From: Hyaloraphidium curvatum SAG 235-1 | Lineage: Eukaryota > Fungi > Monoblepharomycota | DNA: 64,000 nt | NCBI GenBank assembly: GCA_025558095.1 | Contig: JAIVFI010000028.1 | Coordinates: 543,113-607,112, forward strand | Reading direction: 5' to 3' | In this document: piece by piece, positions 16,181 through 64,000 of the stretch | How positions within the stretch are numbered: position 1 is the first letter of the stretch | Layout of the letters: the number at the start of each line of letters is the position of its first letter | Notes under the pieces: model-generated | What the model was told of the DNA's origin: nothing | Databases searched by the model: none | What the model saw: only the letters and a program-made list of their open reading frames with translations | Position numbers and translations under genes: made by a program

Positions 16181-16448
16181 CGTGCGGGCGGCCGGAACAG
16201 AGCCGGGAGGAAGATGGAGGGGATATAAGCGTTCTTTGGGCGCCCAGCGACGTCGCTTCCGGAGGTGCAAATCTGCAATGGGAGACGGTCCGCCAATGAC
16301 GCTAGCGGGATAAAGGACTAGCCGGTCGGGCGCCGCCCCGTGCCGCAGGAAGTCTGCTGTGGCAAACGACTTGACTGTGAAACATACTATCATTCAAAGA
16401 GTGCTAGCAACTGCGCGTCGGCTTTTTCGGGAATCCAATCCGCCAAAG

Positions 16449-38511: not shown

Positions 38512-38839
38512 TCGCGATGGAGGACCAAGGGCAAAAACGGCAAAGTCAGGGAGGAAAAACGGCAGATGCTGCTTCATGCACATGTTATAGCTCAGTGCGT
38601 GCAACGGAGAGCGAACCTCCTTGCGCCCACCACGGGCCTGTAGTCCCAGTCCAAGGCACCCATACCGATCCCATGCCGCGGATCTGCACTAGCCCGATCA
38701 TCTATCGATCGACGCAGGCTCCCGGGAGGATGACCCGCAGAACCTGCGGCGGATGAATTCCGGGCAGACTTGCGGAGGCTCCGGCCGGTCCCGCTTTCCT
38801 TTCCAACCACACCCGTTGACCACACCCCGTTGGGGAGCC

Positions 38840-39982
38840 ATGGCCACCCTCTCGCACCTGCCCGCGCTCTTCCTCGTGCTCCTCGACGCATCGTTCGCGT
38901 TCCTCACGCGATCCCGCGCGCGGCGCATCGCCCGCATCCCGCGGGGCACCTCGGACGCCACCCTGCGGATCGTCGTTCCGGCGCGCGACGAGGCCGCCAA
39001 CATCGCCGACTGCGTCGAAAGCGCGCTCGCCCAGCGTGTGGCGACACGGGTCGTTGTCGTCGATGACGGCTCGACGGACGGGACGGGCGGTATTGCACGG
39101 GAAGCGGCCGCGGGAGACCCGCGCCTCTCCGTGCTCCGGCTGGAGGGCCCGCCCGAGGGTTGGGCCGGCAAGGCGCACGCTCTACACTGCGGCTCTCAGG
39201 ACGCGACGGAAGACTGGCTGCTCTTTCTGGACGCGGACTGCCGGCTGGGCGACGGCGCCGCCGAGGCCGCCGTCGCCCTTGCGCTGCGGGAAGGCGTCGA
39301 CATGGTCTCGATGGGCGCGTCGCTGAGCGTCCCCTCGATCGCCTGGCCGACGGTGACCCCCGTGGGTCTGCAGCTGATCCTCGGCTCGTACGAGCCCGAC
39401 CCCCCCGCCGGCAGCGACAAGGCGCTGGCGGTGGGCCACTTCATCCTCGTCCGCCGGGCCGCCTACGAGGCCGCGGGCACATACGCCGCCATACGCTCCA
39501 CACGCGCCGACGACGTCGACCTCGCCTCGCTCGTGTGCCGCTCCGGCTCGCGCACGCGGTTCGCGTGGGGCGGGGACCACCTGCGGAGCGCGCAGCAGGC
39601 GACCTGGGGGGAGCTCTGGGCCAGCTGGCGAAAGAGCCTGCACGCGGGGACGCAGGGCAGCGCGGGGCAGCTGCTGTCGGGGGGCGCCTTCTTCCTCGCC
39701 TGGGGCGCGGGGCCGTTCGCCTGTGTCGCGATGGGGTTGCGCGGCAAGGACGCGGTGCTGGCGGGGCTCGGCGCGGCCAGCCTGGCGATCCAGGTGTGGG
39801 GCAAGGCCGCGTGCGATGCGGGGATGCGGCTGCCGTGGTACTGGTGCTTCGCCGCTCCCGTCGCGAGGATCGCGCTGGGCGGCATGATGGTAGACGCAGG
39901 GCTGCGGGCGCTCGCCGGCTCTGCAAGCACGTGGAAGGGCCGCTCGGTGGAGAGCCAAACGCAGACAACCAAGCAGGAGTGA
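38840..39982 (+). CDS. GT2 glycosyltransferase, carotenoid/hopanoid glycosyltransferase-like, with C-terminal TM helices
   Basis: IVVPARDE, VDDGSTDGT, PPEGWAGKAHAL, LLFLDAD, DDVDLA. Confidence 0.85.
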   Translation: MATLSHLPALFLVLLDASFAFLTRSRARRIARIPRGTSDATLRIVVPARDEAANIADCVESALAQRVATRVVVVDDGSTDGTGGIAREAAAGDPRLSVLRLEGPPEGWAGKAHALHCGSQDATEDWLLFLDADCRLGDGAAEAAVALALREGVDMVSMGASLSVPSIAWPTVTPVGLQLILGSYEPDPPAGSDKALAVGHFILVRRAAYEAAGTYAAIRSTRADDVDLASLVCRSGSRTRFAWGGDHLRSAQQATWGELWASWRKSLHAGTQGSAGQLLSGGAFFLAWGAGPFACVAMGLRGKDAVLAGLGAASLAIQVWGKAACDAGMRLPWYWCFAAPVARIALGGMMVDAGLRALAGSASTWKGRSVESQTQTTKQE

Positions 39983-49294: not shown

Positions 49295-50713
49295 TCACGG
49301 AGACCGACCCACCGCCGCCTTGGTCCTCTCGTTCAGCTCCTCCCATGCCGTCTGGTCCGCGACCGTCCAGCACGCCGGCGCCCCGGCCTCCGCCGCGCCC
49401 TCCGCCGCCTCCACGTCCGCCCAGTACCGCGCCTGCTCCCCGGCCGTCCGCGGAACCGAGGCCAGGCCGCGGCGCCAGGCGTCGGCCGCTTCCGCCGCGC
49501 GCCGCGCAAACTCCCGGGGGTCGGGCGCCACGGCGACCGTGTTCCAGAGGGTCCGCGCCTCGCACCACTCGTCGGGGCAGGTGCAGTTCGCCGGCAGCGG
49601 GCCCCAGTGCGTGAGCTGCCCCTCGGCGCCGCGGATCTGCAGGGGGAAGTGGGAGAGCGGCACCGCGGGCGCTAGCGAGGACAGGATGCCCTGCACGAGG
49701 CCGTGGTGCTCCGCAGGGACGGCGTGGGGGTAGACTTCCAGCACGGCCGAGAAGGGGGGCAGGAAAAGCAGGTGGCCGAGGGCGGCGCCGTGGACGAGGA
49801 CCAACAGGTCCGTTTGCGCGGCGAGGCGGACCTGCGCGGGGGGGTCGAGGGAGGCAAAGTCGACGATCCCGGGGGCGCGGCCGCCGCCGAGCCAGGTCAG
49901 GGTGGCGTTCATGGCGGCGAGGGCGTGCGGGGCGAAGCGGCGCGTCCGGGTGCGCTGCACGACGGTGATCCGGGGGTGGAGGCGCGGCGGGGGTGCGGCG
50001 GCGGGCTCCGTCGCGCCGATGTCTGCAAAGATCCCGCGGCGCACGTGCACGGCGGCGTCGGGGGGTTCGAACGTGCGGTTCGCGATCCCTTCGGGCCCGA
50101 GACAGTGCCCGCGGTGGGTGCAGGCGGCGCGCGTGCCGGCAACGAGCCGGCCCACCCTGAACGTGCCGGCATCGCGATGCACCAGCCGCACGCCCGGAGC
50201 CAGCGCGGACAACAAGCGCTCGTCCAGGTTCCCGCGCCCGTTGCTGTCAAGGGCGAACAGCGCGAACGGCTTCGTGGTGCCGTCCGCGGCGACCCCGCCG
50301 ACCGCATCCCACGCCATGGAAGTCGCCGGCACGACCTCCTCGAAAAGCACATGGTACAGGTTGCGCGGGCTGAGGCGGCCCAGCATGACGCCCGCAGGCA
50401 CGTCCTCGGCGCCGGCCGCAAGGGCGGCCCACTCGCCGCGGTGCCGCACGGCACGCACGTCGCACCCGGCCGTTTGGGCTGCCGGGTTGTTGGCGATCGA
50501 GCACAGCAGCGGCGGGACTGCCCCCGCGCCACCCGGGTCGAGGAAGTAGACCGTGCCGTTGGCCACGAGCGCGTCGCGGAACACGCAGCGGGCGGCGTCG
50601 CGCGTGCTGCCCGAGCAGACCGCCGGCCCCTCCCCGCCGCCGCGGCGCCGGCCCTGCAGGAGAAGGGCCGCGAGAACGGTGGCGAGCAGCACCGGGCGGG
50701 GCAGGCCCCACAT
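49295..50713 (-). CDS. Glycosyltransferase family 61 (DUF563) with N-terminal signal anchor
   Basis: NLYHVLFE, ITVVQRTRTRRF, QVRLAAQTDLLVLVHGAALGHLLFLPPFSAVLEVYP; starts MWGLPRPVLLATVLAALLL. Confidence 0.85.
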   Translation of the reverse strand: MWGLPRPVLLATVLAALLLQGRRRGGGEGPAVCSGSTRDAARCVFRDALVANGTVYFLDPGGAGAVPPLLCSIANNPAAQTAGCDVRAVRHRGEWAALAAGAEDVPAGVMLGRLSPRNLYHVLFEEVVPATSMAWDAVGGVAADGTTKPFALFALDSNGRGNLDERLLSALAPGVRLVHRDAGTFRVGRLVAGTRAACTHRGHCLGPEGIANRTFEPPDAAVHVRRGIFADIGATEPAAAPPPRLHPRITVVQRTRTRRFAPHALAAMNATLTWLGGGRAPGIVDFASLDPPAQVRLAAQTDLLVLVHGAALGHLLFLPPFSAVLEVYPHAVPAEHHGLVQGILSSLAPAVPLSHFPLQIRGAEGQLTHWGPLPANCTCPDEWCEARTLWNTVAVAPDPREFARRAAEAADAWRRGLASVPRTAGEQARYWADVEAAEGAAEAGAPACWTVADQTAWEELNERTKAAVGRSP

Positions 50714-50782
50714 CCCCAGCAGGGATCCGTGCCAAGGGGTTAGGGATTGGTCGGGTGCTGACGCGACGCTCCGCAGCCGGAC

Positions 50783-51556
50783 ATGCACGCGCACCACCGC
50801 AGCGCGCTCGAGCGCATCGTGCGGCGCTTCCAAGCCGATCCGGATGCGTTGGCGCTGATCGTCGTCGGGTCGGTGGCGCGGGGCGACGCGCGCCCGGACT
50901 CGGACGTCGACGCGTACCTCGTGGTGACCGACGAGCGGTTCGCGGACGGCCGGCGCGAGTGGAACGCGGACGACCTCTGCGACTGGCACGGTGGCACCGC
51001 CGGGGGACCCATCGTCGACCTCGGCTTCCTCCGGGACGCGGCGGAACGCGCGCCCGAGCCGCTGCGCTACGCGTTCACGAACGCGTTCGTCGCCTTCTCG
51101 CGCGTGCCGGACCTGCAGGAACTGCTCGACCGCATCCCCGTATACCAGGGCCGCGAGCGCGCCGGGAAGCTCGCCGGCTTCGCGGGCCAGCTCCCCGTCC
51201 ACCTGGCCTACCTGCGGCTGGGCGAATACAGCCGGAACGCCTACCTGCTGGCGGAACCGGCGGTGGAGCTCGTGCTTTACGGCGGGCGCCTGATTCTGGC
51301 GCACAACCGCATGCTGTACCCCGGCCGCAAGTGGTTCATGAGGGAGCTGGCCCGCGCGCCGGTCAAGCCCGAGGCCATGGTGCGGCTGGCGGAGGAGCTG
51401 CTCGCCGCACCGAGCATAGCACGCGCCGAGGCGTTCTGCGGCGCGGTGCTGGGGTTCGCGGCCTGGCCGCAGCCGCCGGAGGGGGCGACGGCGCGGTTCC
51501 GCCGCGACCGGGAGGATCACTGGCGCAGCGGGGCCCCGCCACTCGCGGACTGCTGA
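50783..51556 (+). CDS. Pol-beta-superfamily nucleotidyltransferase domain protein, bacterial type, single exon
   Basis: GSVARGDARPDSDVD motif; C-terminal helical part with RLILAHNRMLYPGRKW. Confidence 0.85.
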   Translation: MHAHHRSALERIVRRFQADPDALALIVVGSVARGDARPDSDVDAYLVVTDERFADGRREWNADDLCDWHGGTAGGPIVDLGFLRDAAERAPEPLRYAFTNAFVAFSRVPDLQELLDRIPVYQGRERAGKLAGFAGQLPVHLAYLRLGEYSRNAYLLAEPAVELVLYGGRLILAHNRMLYPGRKWFMRELARAPVKPEAMVRLAEELLAAPSIARAEAFCGAVLGFAAWPQPPEGATARFRRDREDHWRSGAPPLADC

Positions 51557-53116
51557 CCGCCCGCCGCACGGGGAGTGTCCTCCCACCCCCATGTTATACA
51601 TCGCGACACGCCATATGCATTACATACGTACGTCCGCCCATTTGTGATGGATGAGAGTATCGATCTGGAGGTGTTCTCGACGTGGGAGAGGTTTCGCGAT
51701 GGCCTGACGGACAGATCTGTCCAGCTGGCTGCTTCTGACCGAATCAAGGAATTACTCTACCGTTCGTCAGAACCTTTTATGGGCGTCACAATAATCCGTA
51801 TAAAAGATTCGATTGGATGTTTCGTGTATCTTTTGAGTTCAATCCACTGGCGTGATTGGATGGTTTCGATGTCGACCGATTCCCAGACTGGACATACATA
51901 TCTTGGCTTTGGGAGCTTTCCGTTCCTGGGTCTCCGGTGGATTCTGCTGGGCACATAAGCCAATCCAGGGCACCATCGCGGAGTTGCTGCGCCCTCCAGA
52001 GGGCTCAGAATACCACGATACGACATTAGACTTACATCAGCTATGGACCGCTCTCGCACCATTGGCATCTGCAAATTTCTCGGTGATGCTGATTTTGCTT
52101 CCTTCTTCCGTCTTTCCATGCTCTTCTCGAAGAAGGTCTCCGCCGCGCCCAAGATCCTGCGCTTAGCACTCCGTTCCTCGTTGTCCAGGCGGAATGGCGA
52201 CCCTTCCAGTATCCATGACCACGTCCCCAGGTCCCATAGGCCGTGACCGTGTTCTGTACCGAGCTCTCGCACCCGCTTGGCCAGCTCTTGCCGCAGGTCT
52301 TCGTTCCGGCTGCAGCCGAAAAGTAGATGCAGCTCGTCATCAATCTCTCCTCGGTCGTGTTTGCAGGTCCGCCGGTCCTTCGGCCAGTTTGGTAGCGCCT
52401 GTGTACCTGCATGATACGAGCGTGTTCTCCATCCCCGTGAGCAGACGGATTAGAGCACGTCTCCGCGATTCCACCTCGATCTCCAACGCTGGATTAAACC
52501 CGAACGCTATGGCCGATGTCCTTGCTCGCTGTGGAAGAAGTGCCGCGATGACTTGACCTGTCAGCAAGGTCTCACTGCCTGATCCTGATCGAATGAGGGA
52601 GTTACTCCCCCGTTCATCAGAGCTCCTGATTTTCAAAAAGCTCTGCATGGCGAATTCCGGTCGATGGTTTCGATGCGGACCGAGTCAGGGACTGGCTGGA
52701 CATGTGAGGTTCCAGGAGGGGTGACGACTCCATTGCTCCCCATGCCACGCACGTGGACCGCTGTAGCCATGCGAATTGCATCCCGTTAGATATAGATTCA
52801 CCCATTCGGTCAATCTGGAGCACATCTGGTCCCAGCCAAGCGGAATGCTCCGAGCTGTCTCCCAGAGGAAATGCCGCGCGCGACTTTCTCGCATCGCCCC
52901 GCCGCATCCGCATCTCCCTTCCCAACCCAATATCTCCCGATTCGAGGTTGGCAACGATGTGTAATGATCCGTCTCCGATGGAGCTTTGCGCGGCGCACGG
53001 CCGCGGGGCGGCAGAGAGAACATGTCGTCCGCCAACGTCCGCATTCCCCGGCGCACCAACGGCCGGGCGCCCCAGCGAAAGGACACCCCGTTTGACGGAG
53101 GACGCATGGAGCCACC

Positions 53117-54813: not shown

Positions 54814-55968
54814 TCACCCCCCGCACGGCTCCGCGATCCGCGCCAGCACCTCCCCCGCGCTCCCCTGCAGGGCCTCCAGCCATCCCCTCCCCGCCTCGCC
54901 CACTTTCCCCGCATCCACCGCCTCGAACCCCCCCGCGAGGACCTCCCCCGCCTCCCGCACGGCGCCCTTGGCCGCGTGCCCGACGCCCGAGTAGTAGTCC
55001 GCGAACTTGGTCCAGGGCTCGGAGCCGCCCGGAGGCAGGAGGACGCGGGAGGGCACGCCGTACGCGTCGGCGAGGGCGGCGCCGTGCAGCGAGCCAGAGA
55101 CCACCGCGCGCGCAGAGGTCAGCCGGAGGACGAGGTCCAGCGCGGGCGCGGTAGAGGGGGTGAAGGCCATGTAGACGGGGCGGAGGCACCCGAAGGTGGA
55201 TTCGAGGGCCTGGAGGGAGGGGTGCGGGAGGCCGGCGGAGGAGAGGGCCGCGAGGTCCGGGGCGGAAAAGTGGGCGGAGGGGAGGAGGCGGCCCGAGGGG
55301 GAGAAGGAAGAAGAGAGGATGCGGGCGGCGGCATGCTGGTGCAGGTGTATCGCCAGGGCGAGGCACGTCCGCCTGTGGGGAAGCACGTAGAGGGAGGGGA
55401 AGAGGAGGGGCATGGCGAGCACGGGGTCGCCGACGGACACCCTTACCGCACTCTTCAGCGGGATACCCGAGGGCGCGGTGCACGGCGCCGACGGACCGCC
55501 GGGGCACACGAGGTCCATCGAGAGGCGGCCGCGGGTCGCGAGGAGCAGCGCGTCCCCCGCCGACGCGTCCCCGGCCGTCCCGTTAACGTCCGCCCGCTCC
55601 AGCTTGGTGCCCATGCCGGCGAGCACGTCCCCTGGTTGGAGGAAATATGCCGGCGCGTGTAGCTCCGAGCCGACCATGACCAGCTTGCCCCGCGCCGAAA
55701 ACTCCGCGCGGCGGACCGACACGCGCTTCCCCGCGGCCCGCTCCAGGGCGGCGCGGAGGATCACCGGCACCAGCGCGTCGCCCAGGTTTTCGACCGCCAC
55801 GTCCGCGCAGCCCACCGGCCACCACGTCGCGCGCACGCAGATTTCGGGCGGGGGCGGCGGCGCGGGAGCGGGCGGGCGGGCGAGCAGCAGCCGCAGGCCA
55901 AACAGGAGACAGGAGAGGAGGAGGAGCAGGAGCGGCAGGGGGAGCCGGCCCCGGAGCACCGCGGCCAT
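54814..55968 (-). CDS. Polysaccharide pyruvyltransferase family protein with signal anchor
   Basis: NLGDAL, TRGRLS, GDPVLAMP, VVSGSLHGAALADAYGVP, KFADYY; starts MAAVLRGRLPLPLLLLLL. Confidence 0.85.
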   Translation of the reverse strand: MAAVLRGRLPLPLLLLLLSCLLFGLRLLLARPPAPAPPPPPEICVRATWWPVGCADVAVENLGDALVPVILRAALERAAGKRVSVRRAEFSARGKLVMVGSELHAPAYFLQPGDVLAGMGTKLERADVNGTAGDASAGDALLLATRGRLSMDLVCPGGPSAPCTAPSGIPLKSAVRVSVGDPVLAMPLLFPSLYVLPHRRTCLALAIHLHQHAAARILSSSFSPSGRLLPSAHFSAPDLAALSSAGLPHPSLQALESTFGCLRPVYMAFTPSTAPALDLVLRLTSARAVVSGSLHGAALADAYGVPSRVLLPPGGSEPWTKFADYYSGVGHAAKGAVREAGEVLAGGFEAVDAGKVGEAGRGWLEALQGSAGEVLARIAEPCGG

Positions 55969-56179
55969 GTCGGCGATTCGAAAGGGGGAGTGGAAAACGG
56001 AAGTCCCTTGGGGATCCGTGCCGCAAGGATTCCCGCCCGCTGTCCCCTCTGTTTCGGGAGCGCACTGCGACGGGCCGGCCTCGTGCGGCACCCTCTGCCG
56101 CGGCTGCCCGGCCGCGCACCCCCCTCGGCCCGCGCCGCCCGCTCCCCTAACCCCCCGCACCCAAACAGCCATCCGATGG

Positions 56180-56605
56180 AGCGCCGCCCCGATCGCCGCC
56201 GAACTCGCGGGGAGGTTCGCCATCGAGCGCCCCGGGCTGCCCGCCTTTGCCCTGACGGAACCCTGCGTGCTGACCGCCGTGGGCAACGACTACTCGTGCG
56301 AGCGGGTGTTTGCGCGCCAGGTCGAGGCCGCGTGCGGGCCGGGGGACGTGCTGCTCGCCATCACGACGTCGGGGACCTCGCCAAACATCCTGGCGGCCCT
56401 CGCCGCCACCAAGCGCAAGGGCGCGGCGACAATCGCGCTGTGCGGACTGGGCGGGCAGATGGACGACGCGGACGTGAGGGTCAGGGTGCCGTCGAGGGAC
56501 ACGCCGCGCGTGCAGGAGGTGCAGATGCTGCTGGGGCACGCCATCTGCGAGATGGTCGAGCGGGAAATGTTCGGGGGAGGGGACGCAGGCGACGCAATGG
56601 ACTGA
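56180..56605 (+). pseudogene. gmhA: Phosphoheptose (sedoheptulose-7-P) isomerase GmhA, N-terminally truncated
   Basis: IAAELAGRF..ERPGLPAFAL, LTAVGNDY..ERVFARQV, GDVLLAITTSGTSPNI, TPRVQE...GHAICE; no in-frame ATG and no GNGGS motif. Confidence 0.85.
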
Positions 56606-56651: not shown

Positions 56652-58184
56652 TCAAATAACGAGCGCCGCGTGCCGTTCCGGCCCAGGCTGCCCCTCGGTC
56701 CGCGCCCTCATTCTCTTAGCCGCGTGCAACGCCGCCCTATTCTCCCACAGCTCCTCCAGCGCCGCCCTCGCGTTCCGCGCCGCGGCCTCGGGCCCCCTCT
56801 CCCTGCGCACCCACCTCCCGCCGCGCCGGCCGACCTCCCGCGCCCTGTCCGGGTCGGATGCGATCGCCCGCATGATCCCCGCCGCGGCATGCACGTCCGG
56901 TTCCGGCCACCCGGGGTTGAGGTACGTCCCCTCCTCCGCCGGGCACCCCGTGCCATTGTCGCGCCCCTCGCCGATCCGATCGGGCCACCGCACGGGGACG
57001 AGGTACTCCCAACCGGGCGGCTGGAAATCCAGGTTCCCCGAGTAGTTGGTCGCCACCACGGGCTTCCCCATCGCCAGCGCCTGGTACATCCCCAGGCCGA
57101 CGCCCTCGGCGCGGTGCAGGCTCGCGTAGGCGTCGCAGGCGGCAAAGAGCGCGCGCATGCCCGCGGGGGGCAGGGTGCGCGAGACGACGGCGACGGAGGG
57201 GTGGGTAGATGCGAGGGAGACGACGGCGGGCCAGCCGGAGGTGGTGTTGGCGCAGTTGTGGGCTTTGAGGAGCAGGCGCGGGCGGGTGCCAGGCCGGGGC
57301 GGCGGTTGCCCCGGCGGGAAGGCGAGGAGGAAGGCCTGCACGAGCCCCAGGGGGTTCTTGCGGTGCACCGACGAGAGGCAGTCCATGGTGAAGAGGAAGA
57401 CGTAGTCGCCGGGGAGGAAGCCCAGCTCGCTGCGGGCGGCGGCGACCTCGTGCGCGGGGGGTTCTCCCGAACCGACGAACTCGGGGGAGTACGTCTCCCG
57501 CACCGCGCGCACGGGCAGAGCGGTCCATTTCCGGAAAGTCGCGGCGACGAACTCCGAGTGGGCCCAAATGCCGTCGAGCGAGGCGAGCTTGCGCAGCCAG
57601 TCGCGGGGGATGACCTCGGTCTCGAGCGGAATCCACGCCACCGCGAGGGCGTCGCGGTCGGGGCGGAAGGAACCGGTGGTCGCCGCCTCGAACACGACGT
57701 CGAGCAGGTCCAACGCGACCCCCGTCAGCGAGACGAAGTAGCCGTGGGGCGCGCGGCAGTCCATCCCCGCCACGTCCGCCCCTCCCGCCCTCAATTCGGC
57801 CAGCAGCGCCTCCCACGCCTCCTTGTCCGTCTTGTGCGGGGTAGAGACGACGTCGTGGGCGTCGCACGCGCGCACGGGGATGCCGGCCAGCGCGAGGGTG
57901 CGCAGGAAGGAGCGCGAGCCGGCGGCGATGCCGAACTGTCCCGAGAACCAGGAGTAGAACGCCACGCCGAACGTTTTCTCGGCCGAGTGGTTCTCCGACG
58001 AGCCGGCGTCCGGCCGCGAGAAGGCGTCGAGTGTCCGCGGGAATTCAGCCGACGCGAGGGCGGAGAGGCCGTCCCGGGCCGGTTCGCGGGCGGGCCCCAC
58101 CGGGAGCGCCCCATGGAGGCGCAGACGGAGCACCGTCAGGAGGCTCAAGGCCGCGCTGAGGGTCGCGAGGAGCCTTTTCTGCAT
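56652..58184 (-). CDS. GT4 (group 1) glycosyltransferase with signal anchor
   Basis: SSVHRKNPLGLVQAF, ACDAYASLHRAEGVGLG, GKPVVATNYSGNLDF, WPEPD. Confidence 0.88.
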   Translation of the reverse strand: MQKRLLATLSAALSLLTVLRLRLHGALPVGPAREPARDGLSALASAEFPRTLDAFSRPDAGSSENHSAEKTFGVAFYSWFSGQFGIAAGSRSFLRTLALAGIPVRACDAHDVVSTPHKTDKEAWEALLAELRAGGADVAGMDCRAPHGYFVSLTGVALDLLDVVFEAATTGSFRPDRDALAVAWIPLETEVIPRDWLRKLASLDGIWAHSEFVAATFRKWTALPVRAVRETYSPEFVGSGEPPAHEVAAARSELGFLPGDYVFLFTMDCLSSVHRKNPLGLVQAFLLAFPPGQPPPRPGTRPRLLLKAHNCANTTSGWPAVVSLASTHPSVAVVSRTLPPAGMRALFAACDAYASLHRAEGVGLGMYQALAMGKPVVATNYSGNLDFQPPGWEYLVPVRWPDRIGEGRDNGTGCPAEEGTYLNPGWPEPDVHAAAGIMRAIASDPDRAREVGRRGGRWVRRERGPEAAARNARAALEELWENRAALHAAKRMRARTEGQPGPERHAALVI

Positions 58185-58574
58185 TTCCGAGTCGCAGGTA
58201 TCGGCGTCGTCCCTCGGCACGGCCACCTCCCGGATCCTTGCCGGAAGCCACGCTTCGGCAGCGGCACGAAGACCTCCGGTTGCCGCTAAGAGCTCCGCCG
58301 GGCGCACCTTCTCGCCTCTTGCGGGTTGCCTGGAGCCCAGAGGCGGAGGCGGCGGCGGGCGGCCCCACCAGCCCGCCTATATCGGCCGGCGACTCTCCGC
58401 GCTTCGCCAAGCCCAATCTCCTTGCACTTAGGCACCCTTGGTGAGTCCACCGGGGCTGTGAGAGGCCGTGCTGAACTGTGCCACCGCCCTTACCGAGTCG
58501 CCCTTTCGGCCGCGACGCGTCTACAAAGGGCGCGATCCCTCAGCGATCCCCATCTTTCGTCCTTTGGTGGCCGC

Positions 58575-60179
58575 ATGGCCGGCGGCCCCCGCGAGCTCCG
58601 GCCGGCCGTGTTCGTCGACCGCGACGGCACGCTGAACCCTGATGCGGGACACACGCACCGCGCCGAGGATTTTCGGCTGTTCCCCGGCGCCGCGGACGCG
58701 CTGCGGCGACTCGCGGGGAGGGGCTTCCTGCTCGCGGTGGTGACGAACCAGGGGGGCATCGGGCGGGGGCTCTACACGGAGGGGCACTTCGAGGCGGTCA
58801 CGGACCACATGCATTCGCTGCTGGCGGCGGAGGGCGCGCGGGTCGACGCGGTGGTGCACTGTCCCCACGCGCCCGACGCGCGGTGCCGCTGCCGGAAACC
58901 CGAGCCGGGCATGTTCGTGGCCGCTGCTACCAGTCTCAGCATCGACCTCGCGGCTTCGTTTGCCGTGGGCGACCGGCCATCGGACCTCATCGCCGCGCGC
59001 ACCGCGGGGATCCCCCGGTGCGCGCTCGTGCACTGCGGCGAGCCGCTGCCCTTTGCCGCGGACCGGCACGCCGATTTCGCGGGCGACGACCTCTCCGCCG
59101 CCGCCCGCTGGATCCTTTCCTTCCCGCCGCCCTCTCCCCGCCTCCCCGCCCACCCCTCCCGCGCCCTCGCCCGCGCGCCCCTCCGCGTCGGCCTCGCGGG
59201 GGGCGGCACCGACGTCCCCCCCTTCCCCTCGCTGCACGGCGGCGCCGCCCTCGCCCTCGCCATCTCCCTCTCCGCCCGCGCGGAGGTGTGCCTCCTGCCC
59301 CCGGGGTCCCCGTGCCGCTTCCTCACCCCGGACCTCGGCCAGTCCCTCTCGCACGACCCGTCGGAGCTCGCCCTCCCCCCGTCGGATTCGCCGTGCCTCC
59401 TCCCCCTTGCCGCTTATCGGCACTTTGCCCTCCTCCGCGGCCCATTTTCCTGCCTCGCCTCGATCCGCTCGGACGCGCCGCCGGGCTCCGGTTTAGGCGG
59501 ATCCTCCGCGTGCCTGGTGGCCCTCGTTAGGGGGTTTGCGGCGGTCTTGGGAATCCCAATGTCGGCGCGGGAGGTCGCCGAGGCGTGCTGCACGATCGAG
59601 AGGGGGGACCTGGCGATGCCGGGAGGCGGGCAGGACGCGTTTTCGGCGGCATCCGGTGGGGTGAACCTTTTCACGTTTCCCAAGGGAGAGGGAGAGATCG
59701 GCATACGGAGGATCATCCCGGGGCAACGCACGGTCGAGGGGCTGGAGGGATTGGTGCTTCGGTGCTCCGGGGCGGGGCGGCCGCCCGGGACGGGGCACGC
59801 CGCTCGGGCCGACCGGGACGCGCTGGACCACGGGGAGGAGGAGGCGCTGCTGCGGATGAAGGGCGCGGCGCTGGCGGCCGCGGACGCGCTCGAACGGGAC
59901 GACTGGCCGGCTGCGGCGGCCGCGATCGCCGCGTCGTGGTCGGCCAAGCCCTCGGGCGGGAGCGTTCCGGCGGTCGTCGCGGCGCTCGGGGCCGGTGCGG
60001 CAGCTGCCAAGGTGTGCGGCGCGGGGGGCGGCGGGTTCGCCGTCGCGCTGTGCGGGGCGGAGGCGAGGGAGGCGGTGGAGCGGGCGCTGGCGGAGGCGTC
60101 GTCGGCCGGTTGGACGGTTCCGGTGAGGCTGGCGTTCGCGGGTGCGACGGCGGAGATCGCACCCCCCGACGGGCCGTAG
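58575..60179 (+). CDS. gmhB-hddA: Fusion of GmhB (heptose-1,7-bisphosphate phosphatase, HAD) and HddA (heptose-7-phosphate kinase, GHMP)
   Basis: AVFVDRDGTLN, VTNQGGIGRG, CPH...CRCRKPEPGM, VGDRPSD; then RAPLRVGLAGGGTD, PPGSGLGGSS, IER..L...GGGQD, KVCGAGGGGF in one ORF. Confidence 0.92.
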   Translation: MAGGPRELRPAVFVDRDGTLNPDAGHTHRAEDFRLFPGAADALRRLAGRGFLLAVVTNQGGIGRGLYTEGHFEAVTDHMHSLLAAEGARVDAVVHCPHAPDARCRCRKPEPGMFVAAATSLSIDLAASFAVGDRPSDLIAARTAGIPRCALVHCGEPLPFAADRHADFAGDDLSAAARWILSFPPPSPRLPAHPSRALARAPLRVGLAGGGTDVPPFPSLHGGAALALAISLSARAEVCLLPPGSPCRFLTPDLGQSLSHDPSELALPPSDSPCLLPLAAYRHFALLRGPFSCLASIRSDAPPGSGLGGSSACLVALVRGFAAVLGIPMSAREVAEACCTIERGDLAMPGGGQDAFSAASGGVNLFTFPKGEGEIGIRRIIPGQRTVEGLEGLVLRCSGAGRPPGTGHAARADRDALDHGEEEALLRMKGAALAAADALERDDWPAAAAAIAASWSAKPSGGSVPAVVAALGAGAAAAKVCGAGGGGFAVALCGAEAREAVERALAEASSAGWTVPVRLAFAGATAEIAPPDGP

Positions 60180-60236: not shown

Positions 60237-61502
60237 TCATCCTTCGCCCACAACGCGGTCCCTCGCAACGCCGCCCGCCAGCAGCCCCTCCAGCTCGCAC
60301 GCGTGCAGCCCTCCCGCGAACCCCTCGACGTCCCCCCGCCCGTACGACACCGCGTACCAGTCCCCCACCCGCGACAGTCCGGAGAGGAACCCCTGCCCGC
60401 TCTCGGGCCCGAACGCGCGGAACGGCCGTCCGGCGCGCAGCAACGCGTACGGCGGGAGCGCCGAGAACGAGTAGGCAAAGAAGTGGTACACGTTGGGCCA
60501 GGTGCCATTGTCAAAATGCCCGATCGCGACGCGTTCGGTAGGGGAGTGGGGGACACCCTGCGAGCCGCCGTGGACCTCAGCGGAGGGGACGCCGAGCTGG
60601 GCGGCCAGACCGGGAAAGGAGGTCCGCGCGACCTCGTCGCAGGCTCCGGTGCGGTCAATGTCGCAGCGGAGGACGACGTGCGGGTCGAGGGAGTAGGAGA
60701 GGAGGAGCTCGCCCACGCGGGACACGAAGGGGATCCAGTTGCGCTCCGTCGGGCGCATGTTGGGGGTCGAGAGGTAGACAACCGAACGCGGGGCAAGCTT
60801 CGGCACGCTCTCTTCGGCAGACGACGCGCCGTTGGGGAAGCTCAGCGCCAGCAGTTCTTCGAGGTCCGCGAGCACGGCGGCAATGCGCTGCGACGCGCAC
60901 GCGCGCGGGTGCGGCGACTTGGCGAGAACGAGCAGCCGCCCGTCAGGCAGCACGACGGGCCGCGGATCCAGATAGCCGTGGTACGGCGCGAGCGGGCACT
61001 CGCTGCGCTCCGAGGGGTGCGGCGCCGCGTCGAGGTGCACGAAGCGGCCCGGCTCGAGGTCCGCCAGACGCCCGCGGAAACGGAATTCCGGCGTGCGGGG
61101 GAAGCGGAAGGCGCGCAACACAACAAAAAAGTTCCCCTGCGGCGGCCACTTCTCGCCCTCGCGCGTCGGGGTCGAGCCGTTGAACGAGGCACGGAACGCG
61201 ACCAGCGCGAATCCCCGTTGGGAGAGCACCTCCGCGTCCTCCGCGGCCACCGACGGATTCGCGAGCAATATCCACGGCGGAAGAGCAGGGAAACGCGGCG
61301 GCACATCGTCCAGCCGCGATTCGGAGGCGGCGAGGGCGGCGGGGATGCCCGAAGGGAGCAGCGGCGTGCGGAGGCCCGGCGGGAGCGCGCAGACCGCCGG
61401 CGCCGGTGCCGCATCGAACGAAGACACTGGGGAGCGAAGGATGAGCCAGGCCGCGGCGAGGGCGGCGGCGGCGGCCACGGGGAGCACGCGGTAGCGCGGC
61501 AT
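60237..61502 (-). CDS. Five-bladed beta-propeller glyco-enzyme (GH130/GT91/GT108-like mannosyltransferase or phosphorylase) with signal anchor
   Basis: NPSV, LDPR, ERNWIPF, YSLDPH, HGGS, FLSGL...SYGRGD motifs; hydrophobic N-terminus. Confidence 0.7.
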   Translation of the reverse strand: MPRYRVLPVAAAAALAAAWLILRSPVSSFDAAPAPAVCALPPGLRTPLLPSGIPAALAASESRLDDVPPRFPALPPWILLANPSVAAEDAEVLSQRGFALVAFRASFNGSTPTREGEKWPPQGNFFVVLRAFRFPRTPEFRFRGRLADLEPGRFVHLDAAPHPSERSECPLAPYHGYLDPRPVVLPDGRLLVLAKSPHPRACASQRIAAVLADLEELLALSFPNGASSAEESVPKLAPRSVVYLSTPNMRPTERNWIPFVSRVGELLLSYSLDPHVVLRCDIDRTGACDEVARTSFPGLAAQLGVPSAEVHGGSQGVPHSPTERVAIGHFDNGTWPNVYHFFAYSFSALPPYALLRAGRPFRAFGPESGQGFLSGLSRVGDWYAVSYGRGDVEGFAGGLHACELEGLLAGGVARDRVVGEG

Positions 61503-61953: not shown

Positions 61954-63733
61954 CAGTCCGGTGCGGGGTACTTGAGCGGCAAACTTCCAAACACAACTTC
62001 GTCTCGTTCCCCACACACCAATTACATCGTTTTCGCCTAGAAAATCTACAGAGACGCGTCCAATAGAGCCGCCTGCACGGCAGTGGGGCTGGGGTTTCGC
62101 CCGGCTTGGATTTCGGCCCAGGCGTCGGCGTTCATTGCCAGCGCTAGAGCGACCTCCGCGTCAAACTCCTCGTCCAGCGCTTCCTGGACCGTCACAGCCA
62201 ATCCGTCGCTTTCATCTTCATCGTCCTCGTCGGGAATGGGCTGGACGGCGTCCCCAGAATCGTCCGCATCGCTCTCGAGCTCGTTGTCGACGACCATCTC
62301 TGCGGTCCGAAAAGAGCGACTGCGAGGCTCCGGCGGCACCAGAGCTGCCTCCTCCTCATCGTCATCGTCAATGTGAATGACCATGGTTGCATCCTGGCGG
62401 CGGTACTCGTCCTCTTCCTTCTCAGCATGAATGACGAGCCTCTCCCATGCGGCAGCATCCACCAGCGCAAACCCCTCCTCCAGAAGGACCTTGACGTCGG
62501 CAAACTTGCGCGACTCGTTGTTCTCAGCAACGCGGTTCTTTGCGCGGGCCCACGCAAGCTCGATGGGGTTCAGTTTGGGGTGGTACGGGGGAAGGAAGTG
62601 GAGGTAGATGTCGAACTCGAGTGCCAGCTGGTCAATGAAGCGTTCCGGCTGGTATCCGAGCTCCTGCAGCAGCTTGCGAAGGTCCTTGACGGTAAAGCCG
62701 CCTCCAGTCTTCGTTTTGCGCGCCGTGAGCTGCTCCATTGTGTAAAGAGTCGTGCCCATGTCCATGATGGCCTTGGCGAGATCTGCCTTCTTGGTCAGCT
62801 GCGAGATCCGTTTTTGACCCTCCACAGGTGCAATGTGGTACGCAGCATTGTCCATGTGTACGTGGATCTCGCCCTCCGGGTCCTTTTTGCGCATCTTCCG
62901 AAATGCACCCCGAGCCCACTCTTCAAAGTGCCTCGCATTCATGGATCCGTGGTAATCCGCCAGCTTATGATCGCCCTGGAACACTTTGGGAGGCTCGAGC
63001 CATCCGTATCTCGATCCACAGCCGATGATGCACCACCGCTTTCCGTACCCGTCCGGGTGGGGAACCTCATCGCCGGGACGATACCAGGTAAAGTTGCTGA
63101 CGTGATTTTGATGGACGTACGATTCATCGAGCCAGTACTGGGGTGAAGAGTCAGCAGGAGCTCAGAACAGCAGCGAGGGAGGGACTTACCGAGACGACTT
63201 TCTTGTCGGGCTCCTTCTCCCCTTTGCGAATCCGGTACCGCTCTCGCAGGTACTCATACCGCCGCACATGGATGTTTGGAGTCATGACAACGATCTTGTG
63301 GCCTCCAATCTCCTTGTATCCGAAGCCCAGGTGCTTGCAGAGGGCACGCACGTATCGAAGACTGAAGAATCGGTTGAATTCCCGCACCATTTCCTTCTGT
63401 AGCTTCTTGGTACGGACACGGCACATTGCCCTGTGCTGTTTGCTGACGTAGTCGATGACAAATGCGTTCCATTCCGTCGTCGTGTTGAAGGTTCGATCAG
63501 ATCTGCGGTCCGCCCACAAGGCCACCTTGCCGCTCCTTTCAAACTCGTTGTACAGCTGCCTGATGGTCCCTTCCGAGGCCCCAACCATCTGCGCAACCTT
63601 TTTGACTGGATCACCGACTCCCATGGCCTTCTTGTGGTGTAGAATCCGGAGGTATGCTTTCCGGAGGTCGTATGACAGCGGTTCTCCGGGCTTCCTGTTT
63701 AGCACTTCGGGGATGCCGAGCATTCTGATATTC
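61954..63733 (-). mobile_element. IS630/Tc1/mariner-type DNA transposon with long DD96E spacer (Sailor-like), 5'-truncated
   Basis: Transposase gene inside; putative end TA|CAGT at 61952-61957; no matching terminus upstream of the ORF. Confidence 0.75.
62046..63723 (-). CDS. DDE transposase; intron 63138-63189
   Basis: HTH-like N-terminus, LGFGYK, YWLDESYVH, DYHGSMN, MDNAAYH, LPPYHPKLNPIELAW; GTAAGT..CTGAC..CAG intron. Confidence 0.9.
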
Positions 63734-63884
63734 TCCCCTCCGCTGAGGTCCACGGCGGCTCGCAGGGTGTCCCCCACTCCCCTACCGAACGCGTCGCGAT
63801 CGGGCATTTTGACAATGGCACCTGGCCCAACGTGTACCACTTCTTTGCCTACTCGTTCTCGGCGCTCCCGCCGTACGCGTTGCT
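63734..63884 (+). repeat. 151-bp perfect inverted copy of 60439-60589
   Basis: Base-by-base reverse complement; the paired endpoints both sum to 124323. Confidence 0.95.
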
Positions 63885-64000
63885 TTAGGGTTAGGTTAGG
63901 TTAGGTTAGGGTTAGGGTTAGGTTAGGTTAGGTTAGGTTAGGTTAGGTTAGGTTAGGTTAGGTTAGGTTAGGTTAGGTAGGTTAGGTTAGGTTAGGTTAG
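63885..64000 (+). repeat. Telomeric repeat, mostly TTAGG with three TTAGGG units and one TAGG
   Basis: Direct reading; G-rich strand runs toward the contig end. Confidence 0.97.

What the first reader, a model, noticed from the sequence alone, without database searches (positions are those of the whole stretch)
58575..60179. GmhB-HddA phosphatase-kinase fusion protein
Seen: one 534-codon ORF joins an intact HAD GmhB domain (DxDGT, TNQ, CxH/CxC zinc site, GD..SD) to a GHMP HddA domain through a Pro-rich linker. Known: these are consecutive steps (C1 phosphorylation, then C7 dephosphorylation) and are normally separate bacterial genes. Fusion is a typical eukaryotic substitute for an operon and could channel heptose-1,7-bisphosphate. 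The kinase C-terminal helix before KVCGAGGGG looks shortened, so activity is uncertain.
Basis: partly seen in the sequence, partly recalled or inferred. Interest (0 to 1): 0.8.

Follow-up and report, generated by a model that had tools for sequence, protein, structure and literature searches.

The report
Fungal fused heptose phosphatase-kinase gene
A zoosporic-lineage fungus (Hyaloraphidium curvatum) carries, next to a chromosome end, a bacterial-type gene in which the phosphatase and the kinase of the seven-carbon-sugar (heptose) pathway are joined into one intact protein, in a domain order found in only one other sequence in public data.

Summary
Window 58575-60179(+) is one 534-codon ORF. 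Residues 9-181 form a complete GmhB-type HAD-IIIA phosphatase. Residues 182-197 are a Pro-rich linker. Residues 198-510 are an HddA/WcbL-type GHMP kinase.

The catalytic and metal-binding motifs are present. So are the WcbL residues that mutagenesis showed to be essential, except that the first Ser of the Ser triplet is Gly. The "shortened helix" is a real deletion of about 7-8 residues before motif III, but the domain still models like WcbL.

The genome is Hyaloraphidium curvatum (Monoblepharomycota), judged by a 100% HSP70 match. The gene is not contamination:
- it lies 4 kb from a TTAGG telomere;
- it has a GT..AG intron in its 5' leader;
- its codon composition matches the host;
- it is single copy.

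An exhaustive search of 1.84 billion cluster representatives found one other phosphatase-first fusion, P0002 (about 50% identity). P0002 sits in a related fungus within the same five-gene cluster (fusion, GT1, gmhA, two unknowns). Kinase-first HddA-GmhB fusions exist in a few prokaryote lineages and arose independently.

Most likely function: heptose-7-P is converted to alpha-heptose-1,7-bisphosphate and then to alpha-heptose-1-P on one polypeptide. The nucleotidyltransferase step is unidentified. This is a new variant of a known kind, of moderate interest.

The parts
58441..58497 (+). 57-nt spliceosomal intron (GTGAGT...AG) in the 5' leader of the fusion gene. The upstream leader exon ends at 58440.
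   Evidence: One contig of run X1 joins 58440 to 58498, and other contigs end exactly at 58440 and begin at 58497. The sequence was read. There is no ATG in the spliced leader before 58575.
58575..60179 (+). Coding sequence of the GmhB-HddA fusion: 534 codons plus a TAG stop, with no intron detected inside it.
   Evidence: Single copy in the 31.9-Mb genome. RNA-type contigs cover 58497-59081 and 59243-59764 without joints.
58599..59117 (+). GmhB-type HAD-IIIA phosphatase domain (residues 9-181). It has D15/D17, T57, K108, D133/D137 and the Zn cap C96-x-H98...C104-x-C106 with 5-residue spacing.
   Evidence: NF006506 172.5 bits and TIGR01656 128 bits. Alignment to 3L8E. Foldseek TM 0.86 to 2GMW/3L8E. 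A 5-residue cap spacing is a natural variant (PMC9798254).
59118..59165 (+). Pro-rich linker (residues 182-197).
   Evidence: Sequence. pLDDT falls to 75-78 here. In the homologue P0002 the linker keeps a Met at the position of a bacterial HddA start.
59166..60104 (+). HddA/WcbL-type GHMP kinase domain (residues 198-510). Motif I is APLRVGLAGGGTD, motif II is PPGSGLGGSS, the catalytic pair is Q353-D354, and motif III is KVCGAGGGG.
   Evidence: Foldseek TM 0.87, rmsd 2.8 A to WcbL 4USK. All 40 columns invariant among 11 relatives are kept.
59946..59966 (+). Site of the 7-8-residue deletion (residues about 458-464) between the conserved Lys and the helix before motif III.
   Evidence: Alignments. 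The homologue P0002 is shortened by only about 3-4 residues.
56652..58307 (-). GT1/GT4-type glycosyltransferase, transcribed divergently from the fusion. It is a conserved cluster partner.
   Evidence: Pfam Glyco_trans_1_4 and Glycos_transf_1. 51% identity to the L001 neighbour.
56183..56605 (+). gmhA (sedoheptulose-7-P isomerase) remnant that lacks the N-terminal ~84 residues, including the GNGGS motif.
   Evidence: SIS_2 profile positions 50-137 only. tblastn matches only residues 85-224 of the L001 GmhA. An intact paralogue lies at G000:C14.
60237..61502 (-). Conserved 421-aa type-II-membrane protein of unknown family, a cluster partner. Its language-model features are nearest to BMT/GH130-like clusters.
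   Evidence: 54% identity to the L001 neighbour. No Pfam hit. The AF2 model was unusable.
54823..55842 (-). Conserved cluster partner with a weak match to polysaccharide pyruvyl transferase.
   Evidence: 54% identity to the L001 396-aa neighbour. PF04230 at E=0.0035 in the window copy and 0.00022 in L001.
63885..64000 (.). TTAGG/TTAGGG telomere repeats at the end of the contig, 3.7 kb from the fusion's stop codon.
   Evidence: The same repeat ends contig C14.

Best explanation
This is a functional, horizontally acquired, bifunctional enzyme of the bacterial GDP-heptose (alpha) branch, living in a subtelomeric glycan-synthesis cluster of the fungus Hyaloraphidium curvatum.

Proposed mechanism:
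1. GmhA converts sedoheptulose-7-P to D-glycero-D-manno-heptose-7-P. The intact gmhA copy is on contig C14; the copy next to the fusion is truncated.
2. The C-terminal GHMP domain phosphorylates O1 with ATP, using D354 as base, R204 to stabilise the transition state, and D213 and Q353 to bind the heptose. The product is alpha-heptose-1,7-bisphosphate.
3. The N-terminal HAD domain removes the 7-phosphate, using D15 as nucleophile, D17 as acid/base, Mg2+ held by D133/D137, and the Zn cap for substrate recognition. The product is alpha-heptose-1-P.
4. The product is then activated or transferred by enzymes not yet identified, and used by the neighbouring GT1 and other cluster proteins.

What the fusion does: it fixes a 1:1 stoichiometry and keeps the bisphosphate intermediate local. 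It replaces operon coupling in a eukaryote.

How the fusion arose: probably by loss of the stop codon between adjacent gmhB and hddA genes, before the two fungal lineages split.

Shown here: domain identity, intact residues, eukaryotic residence, a spliced transcript, conservation with synteny, and rarity of the architecture. Inferred: substrates, anomer, channelling, and the direction and time of transfer.
For: Domain identity and integrity:
- Domain matches and residue-level alignment.
- WcbL residues proven essential by mutagenesis are conserved (PMC4691232, mapped).
- AlphaFold2 gives mean pLDDT 88.4, and both domains superpose on WcbL and E. coli GmhB with TM 0.86-0.87.

Eukaryotic residence:
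- Telomere at the contig end.
- GT..AG intron in the leader.
- GC3 is 0.90, like host genes. The homologue's GC3 is 0.54, like its own host.
- Single copy.
- The host HSP70 exon is 100% identical to H. curvatum.

Conservation:
- P0002 has 48-52% identity over its full length. It comes from run SRR23967301, which also holds an HSP70 94% identical to the host's.
- There is five-gene synteny between the two fungal loci.
- The two fungal kinase domains are sisters (SH-aLRT 99) inside bacterial HddAs.

Pathway context:
- The best GmhB-domain relatives, P0121 and P0125, lie in gmhA-hddC-gmhB clusters.
- An intact gmhA exists elsewhere in the genome.

Origin of the fusion:
- P0002 keeps a Met at the HddA start position inside the linker.
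Against: - No enzyme assay has been done.
- The kinase domain scores far below NCBIfam's HddA equivalog cut-off (91.8 against 600 bits). It sits on a long branch and has lost the usual 'II..Q' segment after the conserved Arg, as well as 7-8 residues before motif III.
- The GmhB domain scores just under its equivalog cut-off (172.5 against 178).
- Its best-named family is the beta-anomer phosphatase, and my GmhB tree does not separate alpha from beta contexts.
- No HddC- or HldC-type nucleotidyltransferase is in the cluster or clearly in the genome.
- The adjacent gmhA is truncated, which could mean the cluster is decaying.
- Transcript continuity across the linker (59082-59242) is not shown by the listed contigs, and run X1 is only presumed to be RNA.
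Confidence: 0.72

Rival explanations
1. The fold and chemistry are the same, but the substrate has shifted. After transfer and rapid divergence, the kinase-phosphatase pair may act on a different manno-configured sugar phosphate, or may yield a product other than alpha-heptose-1-P.
For: - The fungal kinase stem branch is long, at 1.47 substitutions per site.
- The score is far below the HddA equivalog cut-off.
- The lid region and the segment before motif III are altered.
- No dedicated heptose-1-P nucleotidyltransferase was found.
Against: - The heptose-binding residues of WcbL (D22, Q162) are kept.
- gmhA is a conserved cluster partner in the relative, and an intact copy is present in this genome. 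gmhA has no known role other than making heptose-7-P.
- The nearest solved structures and all top sequence hits are heptokinases.
Confidence: 0.15
2. The gene is a decaying relic. The cluster is being lost in this subtelomere, and the fusion ORF is no longer functional or needed.
For: - The adjacent gmhA has lost its N-terminus.
- The location is subtelomeric, beside a transposon and a duplicated gene fragment.
- The kinase carries a deletion.
Against: - The 534-codon frame is open.
- Every catalytic or invariant residue of both domains is retained despite about 50% divergence from P0002.
- The leader is spliced and the gene is covered by run X1.
- An intact gmhA paralogue exists.
- The models are confident.
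Confidence: 0.08
3. The two domains are made as separate proteins, through an internal promoter or internal initiation, so the fusion exists only at the DNA level.
For: The listed contigs of X1 leave 59082-59242 uncovered. P0002 has a Met just before its kinase domain.
Against: - In this window there is no Met between residues 113 and 329, so the kinase cannot start on its own.
- The depth table shows some coverage in 59043-59239.
- The continuous frame is conserved in two species.
Confidence: 0.03
4. Bacterial contamination or chimeric assembly.
For: All close relatives of each domain are prokaryotic.
Against: - The gene is on a 607-kb contig that ends in a telomere, between eukaryotic features: a Tc1/mariner-like DDE transposase and a spliceosomal intron.
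- GC3 matches the host.
- The orthologous cluster in a second genome is flanked by kinesin and cyclin-related genes.
Confidence: 0.02

Closest known systems
Separate bacterial HddA (WcbL; PDB 4USK/4USM, 3K85, 4N3O) and GmhB (PDB 3L8E, 2GMW) of the GDP-D-glycero-alpha-D-manno-heptose pathway
   Same: Same two folds, same catalytic residues and the same consecutive reactions. Both are linked to gmhA and to glycosyltransferases.
   Different: Here both are on one polypeptide, phosphatase first, in a fungal nuclear genome with an intron in the leader. The kinase is about 35-38% identical to any bacterial HddA and has a 7-8-residue deletion. No hddC is nearby.
Prokaryotic HddA-GmhB fusions: Candidatus Beckwithbacteria 'HAD-IIIA family hydrolase' P0273 and the P0122 clade, marine P0142, and actinobacterial P0110
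   Same: The same two activities are joined. P0122 and P0142 sit in operons next to an NTP_transferase gene (with gmhA in L004); L002 has a SIS_2 gene but no NTP_transferase.
   Different: The domain order is opposite (kinase first). Identity to the window protein is only 32-33%. They fall in separate well-supported clades of the kinase tree, so they are independent fusions.
HldE (RfaE), the bifunctional heptose-7-P kinase / heptose-1-P adenylyltransferase of the ADP-heptose (beta) pathway, and the 'HENases' reported across kingdoms (Tang et al., Science 2024, read via PMC11461863)
   Same: A bifunctional heptose-pathway enzyme. There is precedent for heptose enzymes in eukaryotes.
   Different: The kinase fold differs (PfkB, not GHMP) and the fused partner differs (nucleotidyltransferase, not phosphatase). 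It makes the beta anomer. That survey reported the phosphatase as absent from eukaryotes, and no HldE-type match over cut-off is in this genome.
Other GmhB fusions: HddC-GmhB (P0150, P0250, L107), GT9 heptosyltransferase-GmhB (P0123, P0152), and HisB (HAD phosphatase-IGPD)
   Same: GmhB-type HAD-IIIA domains fuse readily with pathway partners.
   Different: The partner here is the preceding enzyme of the pathway, not the following one or a transferase.
FKP (L-fucokinase/GDP-fucose pyrophosphorylase; PDB 5YYS, 9IIT)
   Same: A GHMP sugar-1-kinase fused to another step of nucleotide-sugar synthesis. It is a weak sequence and structure match to the kinase domain.
   Different: It is a salvage enzyme for fucose. 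The fused partner is a pyrophosphorylase, and there is no phosphatase step.

Membership tests
GmhB (D,D-heptose 1,7-bisphosphate 7-phosphatase; HAD-IIIA) | HAD motifs: DxD nucleophile and acid/base, Thr of motif 2, Lys of motif 3, DxxxD of motif 4 | tested here: met
   D15/D17, T57, K108 and D133/D137 align with E. coli D11/D13, T53, K111 and D136/D140. The motifs are as listed in PMC9798254.
GmhB (D,D-heptose 1,7-bisphosphate 7-phosphatase; HAD-IIIA) | Zn-binding cap made of CxH and CxC motifs | tested here: met
   C96-P-H98 and C104-R-C106, with 5-residue spacing. The same spacing occurs in P0002 and in 6 of the 16 bacterial GmhB relatives checked. Spacings of 5-6 or 12-13 are both natural (PMC9798254).
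GmhB (D,D-heptose 1,7-bisphosphate 7-phosphatase; HAD-IIIA) | Score over the curated family cut-off | tested here: inconclusive
   NF006506 scores 172.5 against a cut-off of 178, and TIGR00213 scores 134 against 149.6; both fall just below. The domain-level models TIGR01656 (128 against 84) and TIGR01662 (97.6 against 44.6) are passed.
GmhB (D,D-heptose 1,7-bisphosphate 7-phosphatase; HAD-IIIA) | Hydrolysis of the 7-phosphate of heptose-1,7-bisphosphate, and preference for the alpha anomer | not testable with these tools
   The nearest relatives P0121 and P0125 are in hddC-containing (alpha) clusters. The GmhB tree does not separate alpha from beta contexts.
HddA / WcbL (D-glycero-alpha-D-manno-heptose-7-phosphate kinase; GHMP) | GHMP motifs I, II and III and the overall fold | tested here: met
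   APLRVGLAGGGTD, PPGSGLGGSS and KVCGAGGGG are present. Foldseek TM 0.87 to 4USK.
HddA / WcbL (D-glycero-alpha-D-manno-heptose-7-phosphate kinase; GHMP) | Residues shown essential in WcbL: R13, D22, S118-S120, Q162, D163 | tested here: met
   They correspond to R204, D213, G309-S310-S311, Q353 and D354. The first Ser is Gly, as in several bacterial HddAs of alignment A1.
HddA / WcbL (D-glycero-alpha-D-manno-heptose-7-phosphate kinase; GHMP) | Score over NCBIfam equivalog cut-off NF049969 | tested here: not met
   91.8 bits against a cut-off of 600. It is the best GHMP model by far, and all top database hits are named HddA, but the domain is a divergent member.
HddA / WcbL (D-glycero-alpha-D-manno-heptose-7-phosphate kinase; GHMP) | Genomic association with gmhA, gmhB and glycosyltransferases | tested here: met
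   It is fused to gmhB. gmhA and a GT1 are adjacent in both fungal loci.
HddA / WcbL (D-glycero-alpha-D-manno-heptose-7-phosphate kinase; GHMP) | ATP-dependent 1-O-phosphorylation of heptose-7-P | not testable with these tools
   This needs an enzyme assay.
Prokaryotic HddA-GmhB bifunctional proteins (Beckwithbacteria type) | Kinase-first domain order and common descent | tested here: not met
   The window protein is phosphatase first. The kinase tree places the four fusion lineages in separate well-supported clades.

The most novel reading that the evidence does not exclude
The fungal cluster may make and use heptose without any nucleotide sugar. It has no HddC- or HldC-type nucleotidyltransferase. 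Its conserved 421-aa Golgi-type membrane protein has features nearest to BMT and GH130-like (mannoside-phosphorylase-fold) families. Such a protein could transfer heptose directly from the alpha-heptose-1-phosphate made by the fusion enzyme. That would be an NDP-independent heptosylation route, and the first heptose-containing glycan in a fungus.
Probability: 0.08. Interest if true: 0.85.

Novelty: new variant of a known kind. Interest (0 to 1): 0.55.

Why it matters
Heptose pathways are treated as a prokaryotic hallmark. Their intermediates and products (HBP, ADP-heptose) are innate-immune agonists. The recent cross-kingdom survey, read through its commentary, reported heptose enzymes in some eukaryotes but no phosphatase.

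This gene shows three things:
- A complete kinase-plus-phosphatase module of the alpha (GHMP kinase) branch is fixed in an early-diverging fungal lineage.
- It has been kept for long enough to take on host codon composition in two species.
- It has been rebuilt as a single polypeptide.

It is a clean natural example of a gene fusion replacing an operon after bacterium-to-eukaryote transfer. It offers a compact two-step enzyme for making heptose-1-phosphate. It also predicts that these fungi carry a heptose-containing glycan that nobody has looked for.

Tried and rejected
- Contamination was rejected on the telomere, the intron, GC3 and the synteny with a second eukaryotic contig.
- P0138 (371 aa, soil read assembly) looked like a third phosphatase-first fusion. 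Its HAD domain loses the GD..D motif and turns into Arg/Pro/Ser-rich out-of-frame-like sequence before an HddA start. It is probably a frameshifted read-through of adjacent genes, and no contig is on record.
- Donor search gave no answer. The HddA relatives in 80 GTDB species are all 28-39% identical and spread over many phyla. The fungal pair has no resolved bacterial sister. Cluster members of the best hits carry no organism names.
- The alpha-versus-beta assignment of the GmhB domain by tree was unresolved.
- DNA of the bacterial cluster around the best GmhB hit, P0121, could not be fetched, so en-bloc transfer of GT1 and the unknown protein was not tested. tblastn of the fungal neighbours against all fetched bacterial loci gave only a generic GT1 hit.
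- The flank of the intact gmhA on C14 gave no Pfam hits.
- The Atlas search with the fusion found only single-domain kinase clusters.
- The AF2 model of the 421-aa neighbour was too poor (pLDDT 45) for a fold search.
- HSP90, actin and mitochondrial HSP70 were tried for naming the organism but are split by introns. I used one cytosolic HSP70 exon by reference and joined no exons.
- The equal ORF lengths elsewhere in the window (551, 421 and 312 aa, each occurring twice) are not DNA repeats.
Full report
**1. Observation**

The window is about 68% G+C (57-74% in 2-kb windows) and ends in TTAGG/TTAGGG repeats. On the + strand, the ATG at 58575 opens 534 codons that end at the TAG at 60177-60179.

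- Pfam finds HAD-family matches over residues 13-184, and GHMP_kinases_N and GHMP_kinases_C over residues 289-508.
- NCBIfam's best models are GmhB (NF006506, 172.5 bits, residues 9-181) and HddA (NF049969, 91.8 bits, residues 199-492).
- Against solved structures, the best sequence matches are E. coli GmhB (3L8E, E=1.7e-38) and the Burkholderia pseudomallei heptokinase WcbL (4USM, E=1.8e-33).

**2. Integrity of the two domains**

For the phosphatase, the alignment to E. coli GmhB puts these residues on the E. coli catalytic set:

| Window protein | E. coli GmhB |
|---|---|
| D15, D17 | D11, D13 |
| T57 | T53 |
| K108 | K111 |
| D133, D137 | D136, D140 |
| C96, H98, C104, C106 | Zn ligands C92, H94, C107, C109 |

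The zinc cap has 5 residues between the CxH and CxC motifs, against 12 in E. coli. This is not a defect. PMC9798254 describes both 5-6-residue and 12-13-residue caps in natural GmhBs. Among the 16 bacterial GmhB relatives checked, spacings of 5, 7, 8 and 12 all occur.

For the kinase, PMC4691232 reports that WcbL mutants R13A, D22A, Q162L, D163A and the S118-S120 triple mutant are all dead, with D163 as the proposed catalytic base. On the alignment these residues correspond to R204, D213, Q353, D354 and G309-S310-S311. The first Ser is Gly, as in several bacterial HddAs of alignment A1. In that 12-sequence alignment all 40 invariant columns are kept.

The fungal homologue P0002 lacks only 3-4 of them. 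A lid segment after the conserved Arg (bacterial 'II..Q') has also diverged in both fungal proteins.

AlphaFold2, run with a 40-sequence alignment, gives mean pLDDT 88.4. Low confidence is confined to the Zn loop, the linker, residues 400-420 and the termini. A short helix at 465-472 still precedes motif III. By Foldseek the model superposes on WcbL (TM 0.87, rmsd 2.8 A) and on E. coli GmhB (TM 0.86). The doubt about kinase activity is therefore weakened, though not removed.

**3. Which genome, and is the gene at home there?**

- The window is the last 64 kb of a 607-kb contig in a 31.9-Mb, 55-contig assembly, and the fusion is single copy.
- One exon of the cytosolic HSP70 gene, searched by reference without joining exons, is 100% identical to 'hsp71-like protein [Hyaloraphidium curvatum]'. 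The next best matches are an unnamed sequence at 94% and Gonapodya prolifera at 92%.
- H. curvatum belongs to Monoblepharomycota.
- A public run (X1, type guessed as RNA) holds contigs over the locus. One contig skips 58441-58497, a 57-nt GTGAGT...AG intron. Other contigs stop exactly at its borders.
- The spliced leader has no ATG before 58575.
- Contigs cover 58497-59081 and 59243-59764 without joints. The linker (59082-59242) is not covered by any listed piece, so a single transcript is likely but not shown.
- GC3 of the fusion is 0.90, within the host range of 0.84-0.99.

Contamination is excluded.

**4. Relatives and architecture**

The word-index search found one full-length relative, P0002 (567 aa, 48% identity, 99% coverage). 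Below it came only single-domain bacterial HddAs at 33-45% identity.

The exhaustive phmmer scan of 1.84 billion cluster representatives gave the same result. P0002 scored 447 bits, and the next hit scored 174 bits.

P0002 lies on a 23-kb contig of run SRR23967301 that also carries kinesin, cyclin-related, GST and MFS genes. The same run holds the HSP70 that is 94% identical to the host's. It is therefore a relative of Hyaloraphidium, with 55% G+C. In that genome the fusion's GC3 is 0.54, matching its own neighbours.

Five genes are shared between the two loci at 46-63% protein identity:
- the fusion;
- a GT1 glycosyltransferase;
- gmhA;
- a protein of about 420-430 aa of unknown family;
- a protein of about 400 aa that weakly resembles a pyruvyl transferase.

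A third candidate, P0138, is probably a frameshifted read-through of adjacent bacterial genes.

**5. Is the fusion common in bacteria?**

Mostly not.

- Among 80 hddA loci from GTDB species representatives, none is fused.
- In 40 loci gmhB follows hddA at a distance of 0.6-2.5 kb. In 2 loci it precedes hddA. In 5 it is on the other strand. In 33 it is not within 3 kb.
- Kinase-first HddA-GmhB fusions do exist. There is a clade of 13 clusters (90%-identity groups) related to a protein named from Candidatus Beckwithbacteria (P0122, P0269-P0280), a marine lineage (P0142) and an actinobacterial contig (P0110). The P0122 and P0142 loci also carry an NTP_transferase gene beside the fusion (with gmhA in L004).
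- GmhB is also found fused to GT9, GT2 and GT1 transferases, to HddC-type nucleotidyltransferases, to LpxL-type acyltransferases and to others.
- In a quick maximum-likelihood tree of kinase domains, the two fungal sequences are sisters (SH-aLRT 99). They sit on a long stem inside a large bacterial clade (99) with no resolved sister. The four fusion lineages fall in separate, well-supported clades.

The fusions are therefore independent, and the phosphatase-first order is so far confined to these fungi.

P0002 keeps a Met nine residues before 'APLR', which is where bacterial HddAs start. This fits fusion by loss of the stop codon between adjacent gmhB and hddA genes.

**6. Pathway context**

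- The gmhA next to the fusion (56183-56605) matches only residues 85-224 of the relative's GmhA and lacks the GNGGS region.
- An intact gmhA ORF (212 residues aligned; best NCBIfam hits all phosphoheptose isomerase, 168 bits) lies about 5.5 kb from the telomere of contig C14. It is 83.5% identical in DNA to the remnant.
- No HldE-type nucleotidyltransferase passes its cut-off.
- A bacterial HddC query hits only an intron-bearing GMPP-like gene on C17.
- Other NTP_transferase genes lie on C19 and C30.
- The nearest bacterial GmhBs, P0121 (53%) and P0125, sit in gmhA-hddC-gmhB clusters, which is alpha-pathway context.
- My GmhB tree does not separate alpha from beta contexts.

The step after heptose-1-P is therefore open.

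**7. Mechanism**

The most likely mechanism is as follows.
1. The C-terminal kinase converts heptose-7-P to alpha-heptose-1,7-bisphosphate.
2. The N-terminal phosphatase removes the 7-phosphate.
3. The fusion secures co-expression, 1:1 stoichiometry and proximity.

True channelling is inferred only. Because prokaryotes join the same two domains in the other order, a fixed tunnel seems unlikely. I put 0.72 on a working heptose enzyme and 0.15 on a shifted substrate. The remainder goes to a decaying relic, separate products, or an artefact.

**8. Comparison with what is known, and novelty**

Both domains are members of known families, although the kinase is a divergent one: it fails the equivalog cut-off but meets every residue-level test.

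Bifunctional heptose enzymes are known (HldE, HddC-GmhB). Heptose enzymes have also been reported in some eukaryotes, but with the phosphatase stated to be absent there (commentary on Tang et al. 2024). A second commentary places the eukaryotic cases in Protostomia.

Full-text searches found no paper that links heptose with Monoblepharomycota or describes this pathway in fungi.

My verdict is a new variant of a known kind, of moderate interest (0.55).

The most novel reading that the evidence leaves open is that heptose-1-P is used directly by the conserved BMT/GH130-like membrane protein, without any nucleotide sugar. This rests on a lead only, and its structure model failed.

Noticed in passing
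G000:C14:746511-747146 (L013:3810-4445, + strand): An intact gmhA paralogue lies about 5.5 kb from another TTAGG telomere. It is 83.5% identical in DNA to the truncated copy at window 56177-56588. The heptose genes are therefore spread over two subtelomeres.
   Followed up: yes
G000:C30:117.0-118.7 kb (L017:1477-3239, - strand): An intronless, bacterial-looking gene pair on one strand. One gene is a 314-aa GHMP sugar kinase whose best NCBIfam hits are mevalonate kinase and HddA (weak). The other is a 254-aa sugar-1-P nucleotidyltransferase. This may be a second acquired sugar-activation module and a candidate for the missing nucleotidyltransferase.
   Followed up: partly
window 60237-61502 (-) and 63733-63882: The conserved 421-aa cluster protein has a signal-anchor and no Pfam hit. 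Its language-model features are nearest to BMT (PF12141) and GH130 clusters. A fragment of about 150 bp from this gene is duplicated right next to the telomere.
   Followed up: partly
window 63885-64000 and L013 end: Both chromosome ends examined carry mostly TTAGG repeats, with occasional TTAGGG. This is unusual for a fungus.
   Followed up: no
L107:2381-3969: In an uncultured alphaproteobacterium, an HddC-GmhB fusion gene is followed directly by hddA in another frame. This is the rare gmhB-then-hddA order from which a phosphatase-first fusion could arise.
   Followed up: partly
Contigs carrying P0121 (ENA ERZ27314314 and ERZ28573524; no DNA retrievable): The best bacterial relative of the GmhB domain lies in the cluster gmhA-hddC-gmhB, facing hddA-GT1_4-(415-aa unknown)-methyltransferase-GT2. 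Its gene content resembles the fungal cluster (a GT1 plus an unknown of about 420 aa). This hints at en-bloc transfer.
   Followed up: no
window 50783-51553 (+) overlapping 49295-51601 (-): A 257-aa ORF with weak Pol-beta-type nucleotidyltransferase matches (PF01909, 29 bits) lies antisense to a 768-aa ORF with a weak GT61 match. Which strand is the gene is unresolved. It is not a sugar-1-P nucleotidyltransferase type.
   Followed up: partly
window 14741-16393 (-) and 38753-39979 (+): A penicillin-amidase-family ORF (170 bits) and a GT2 glycosyltransferase ORF lie further in from the telomere. The region is otherwise poor in recognisable families.
   Followed up: no
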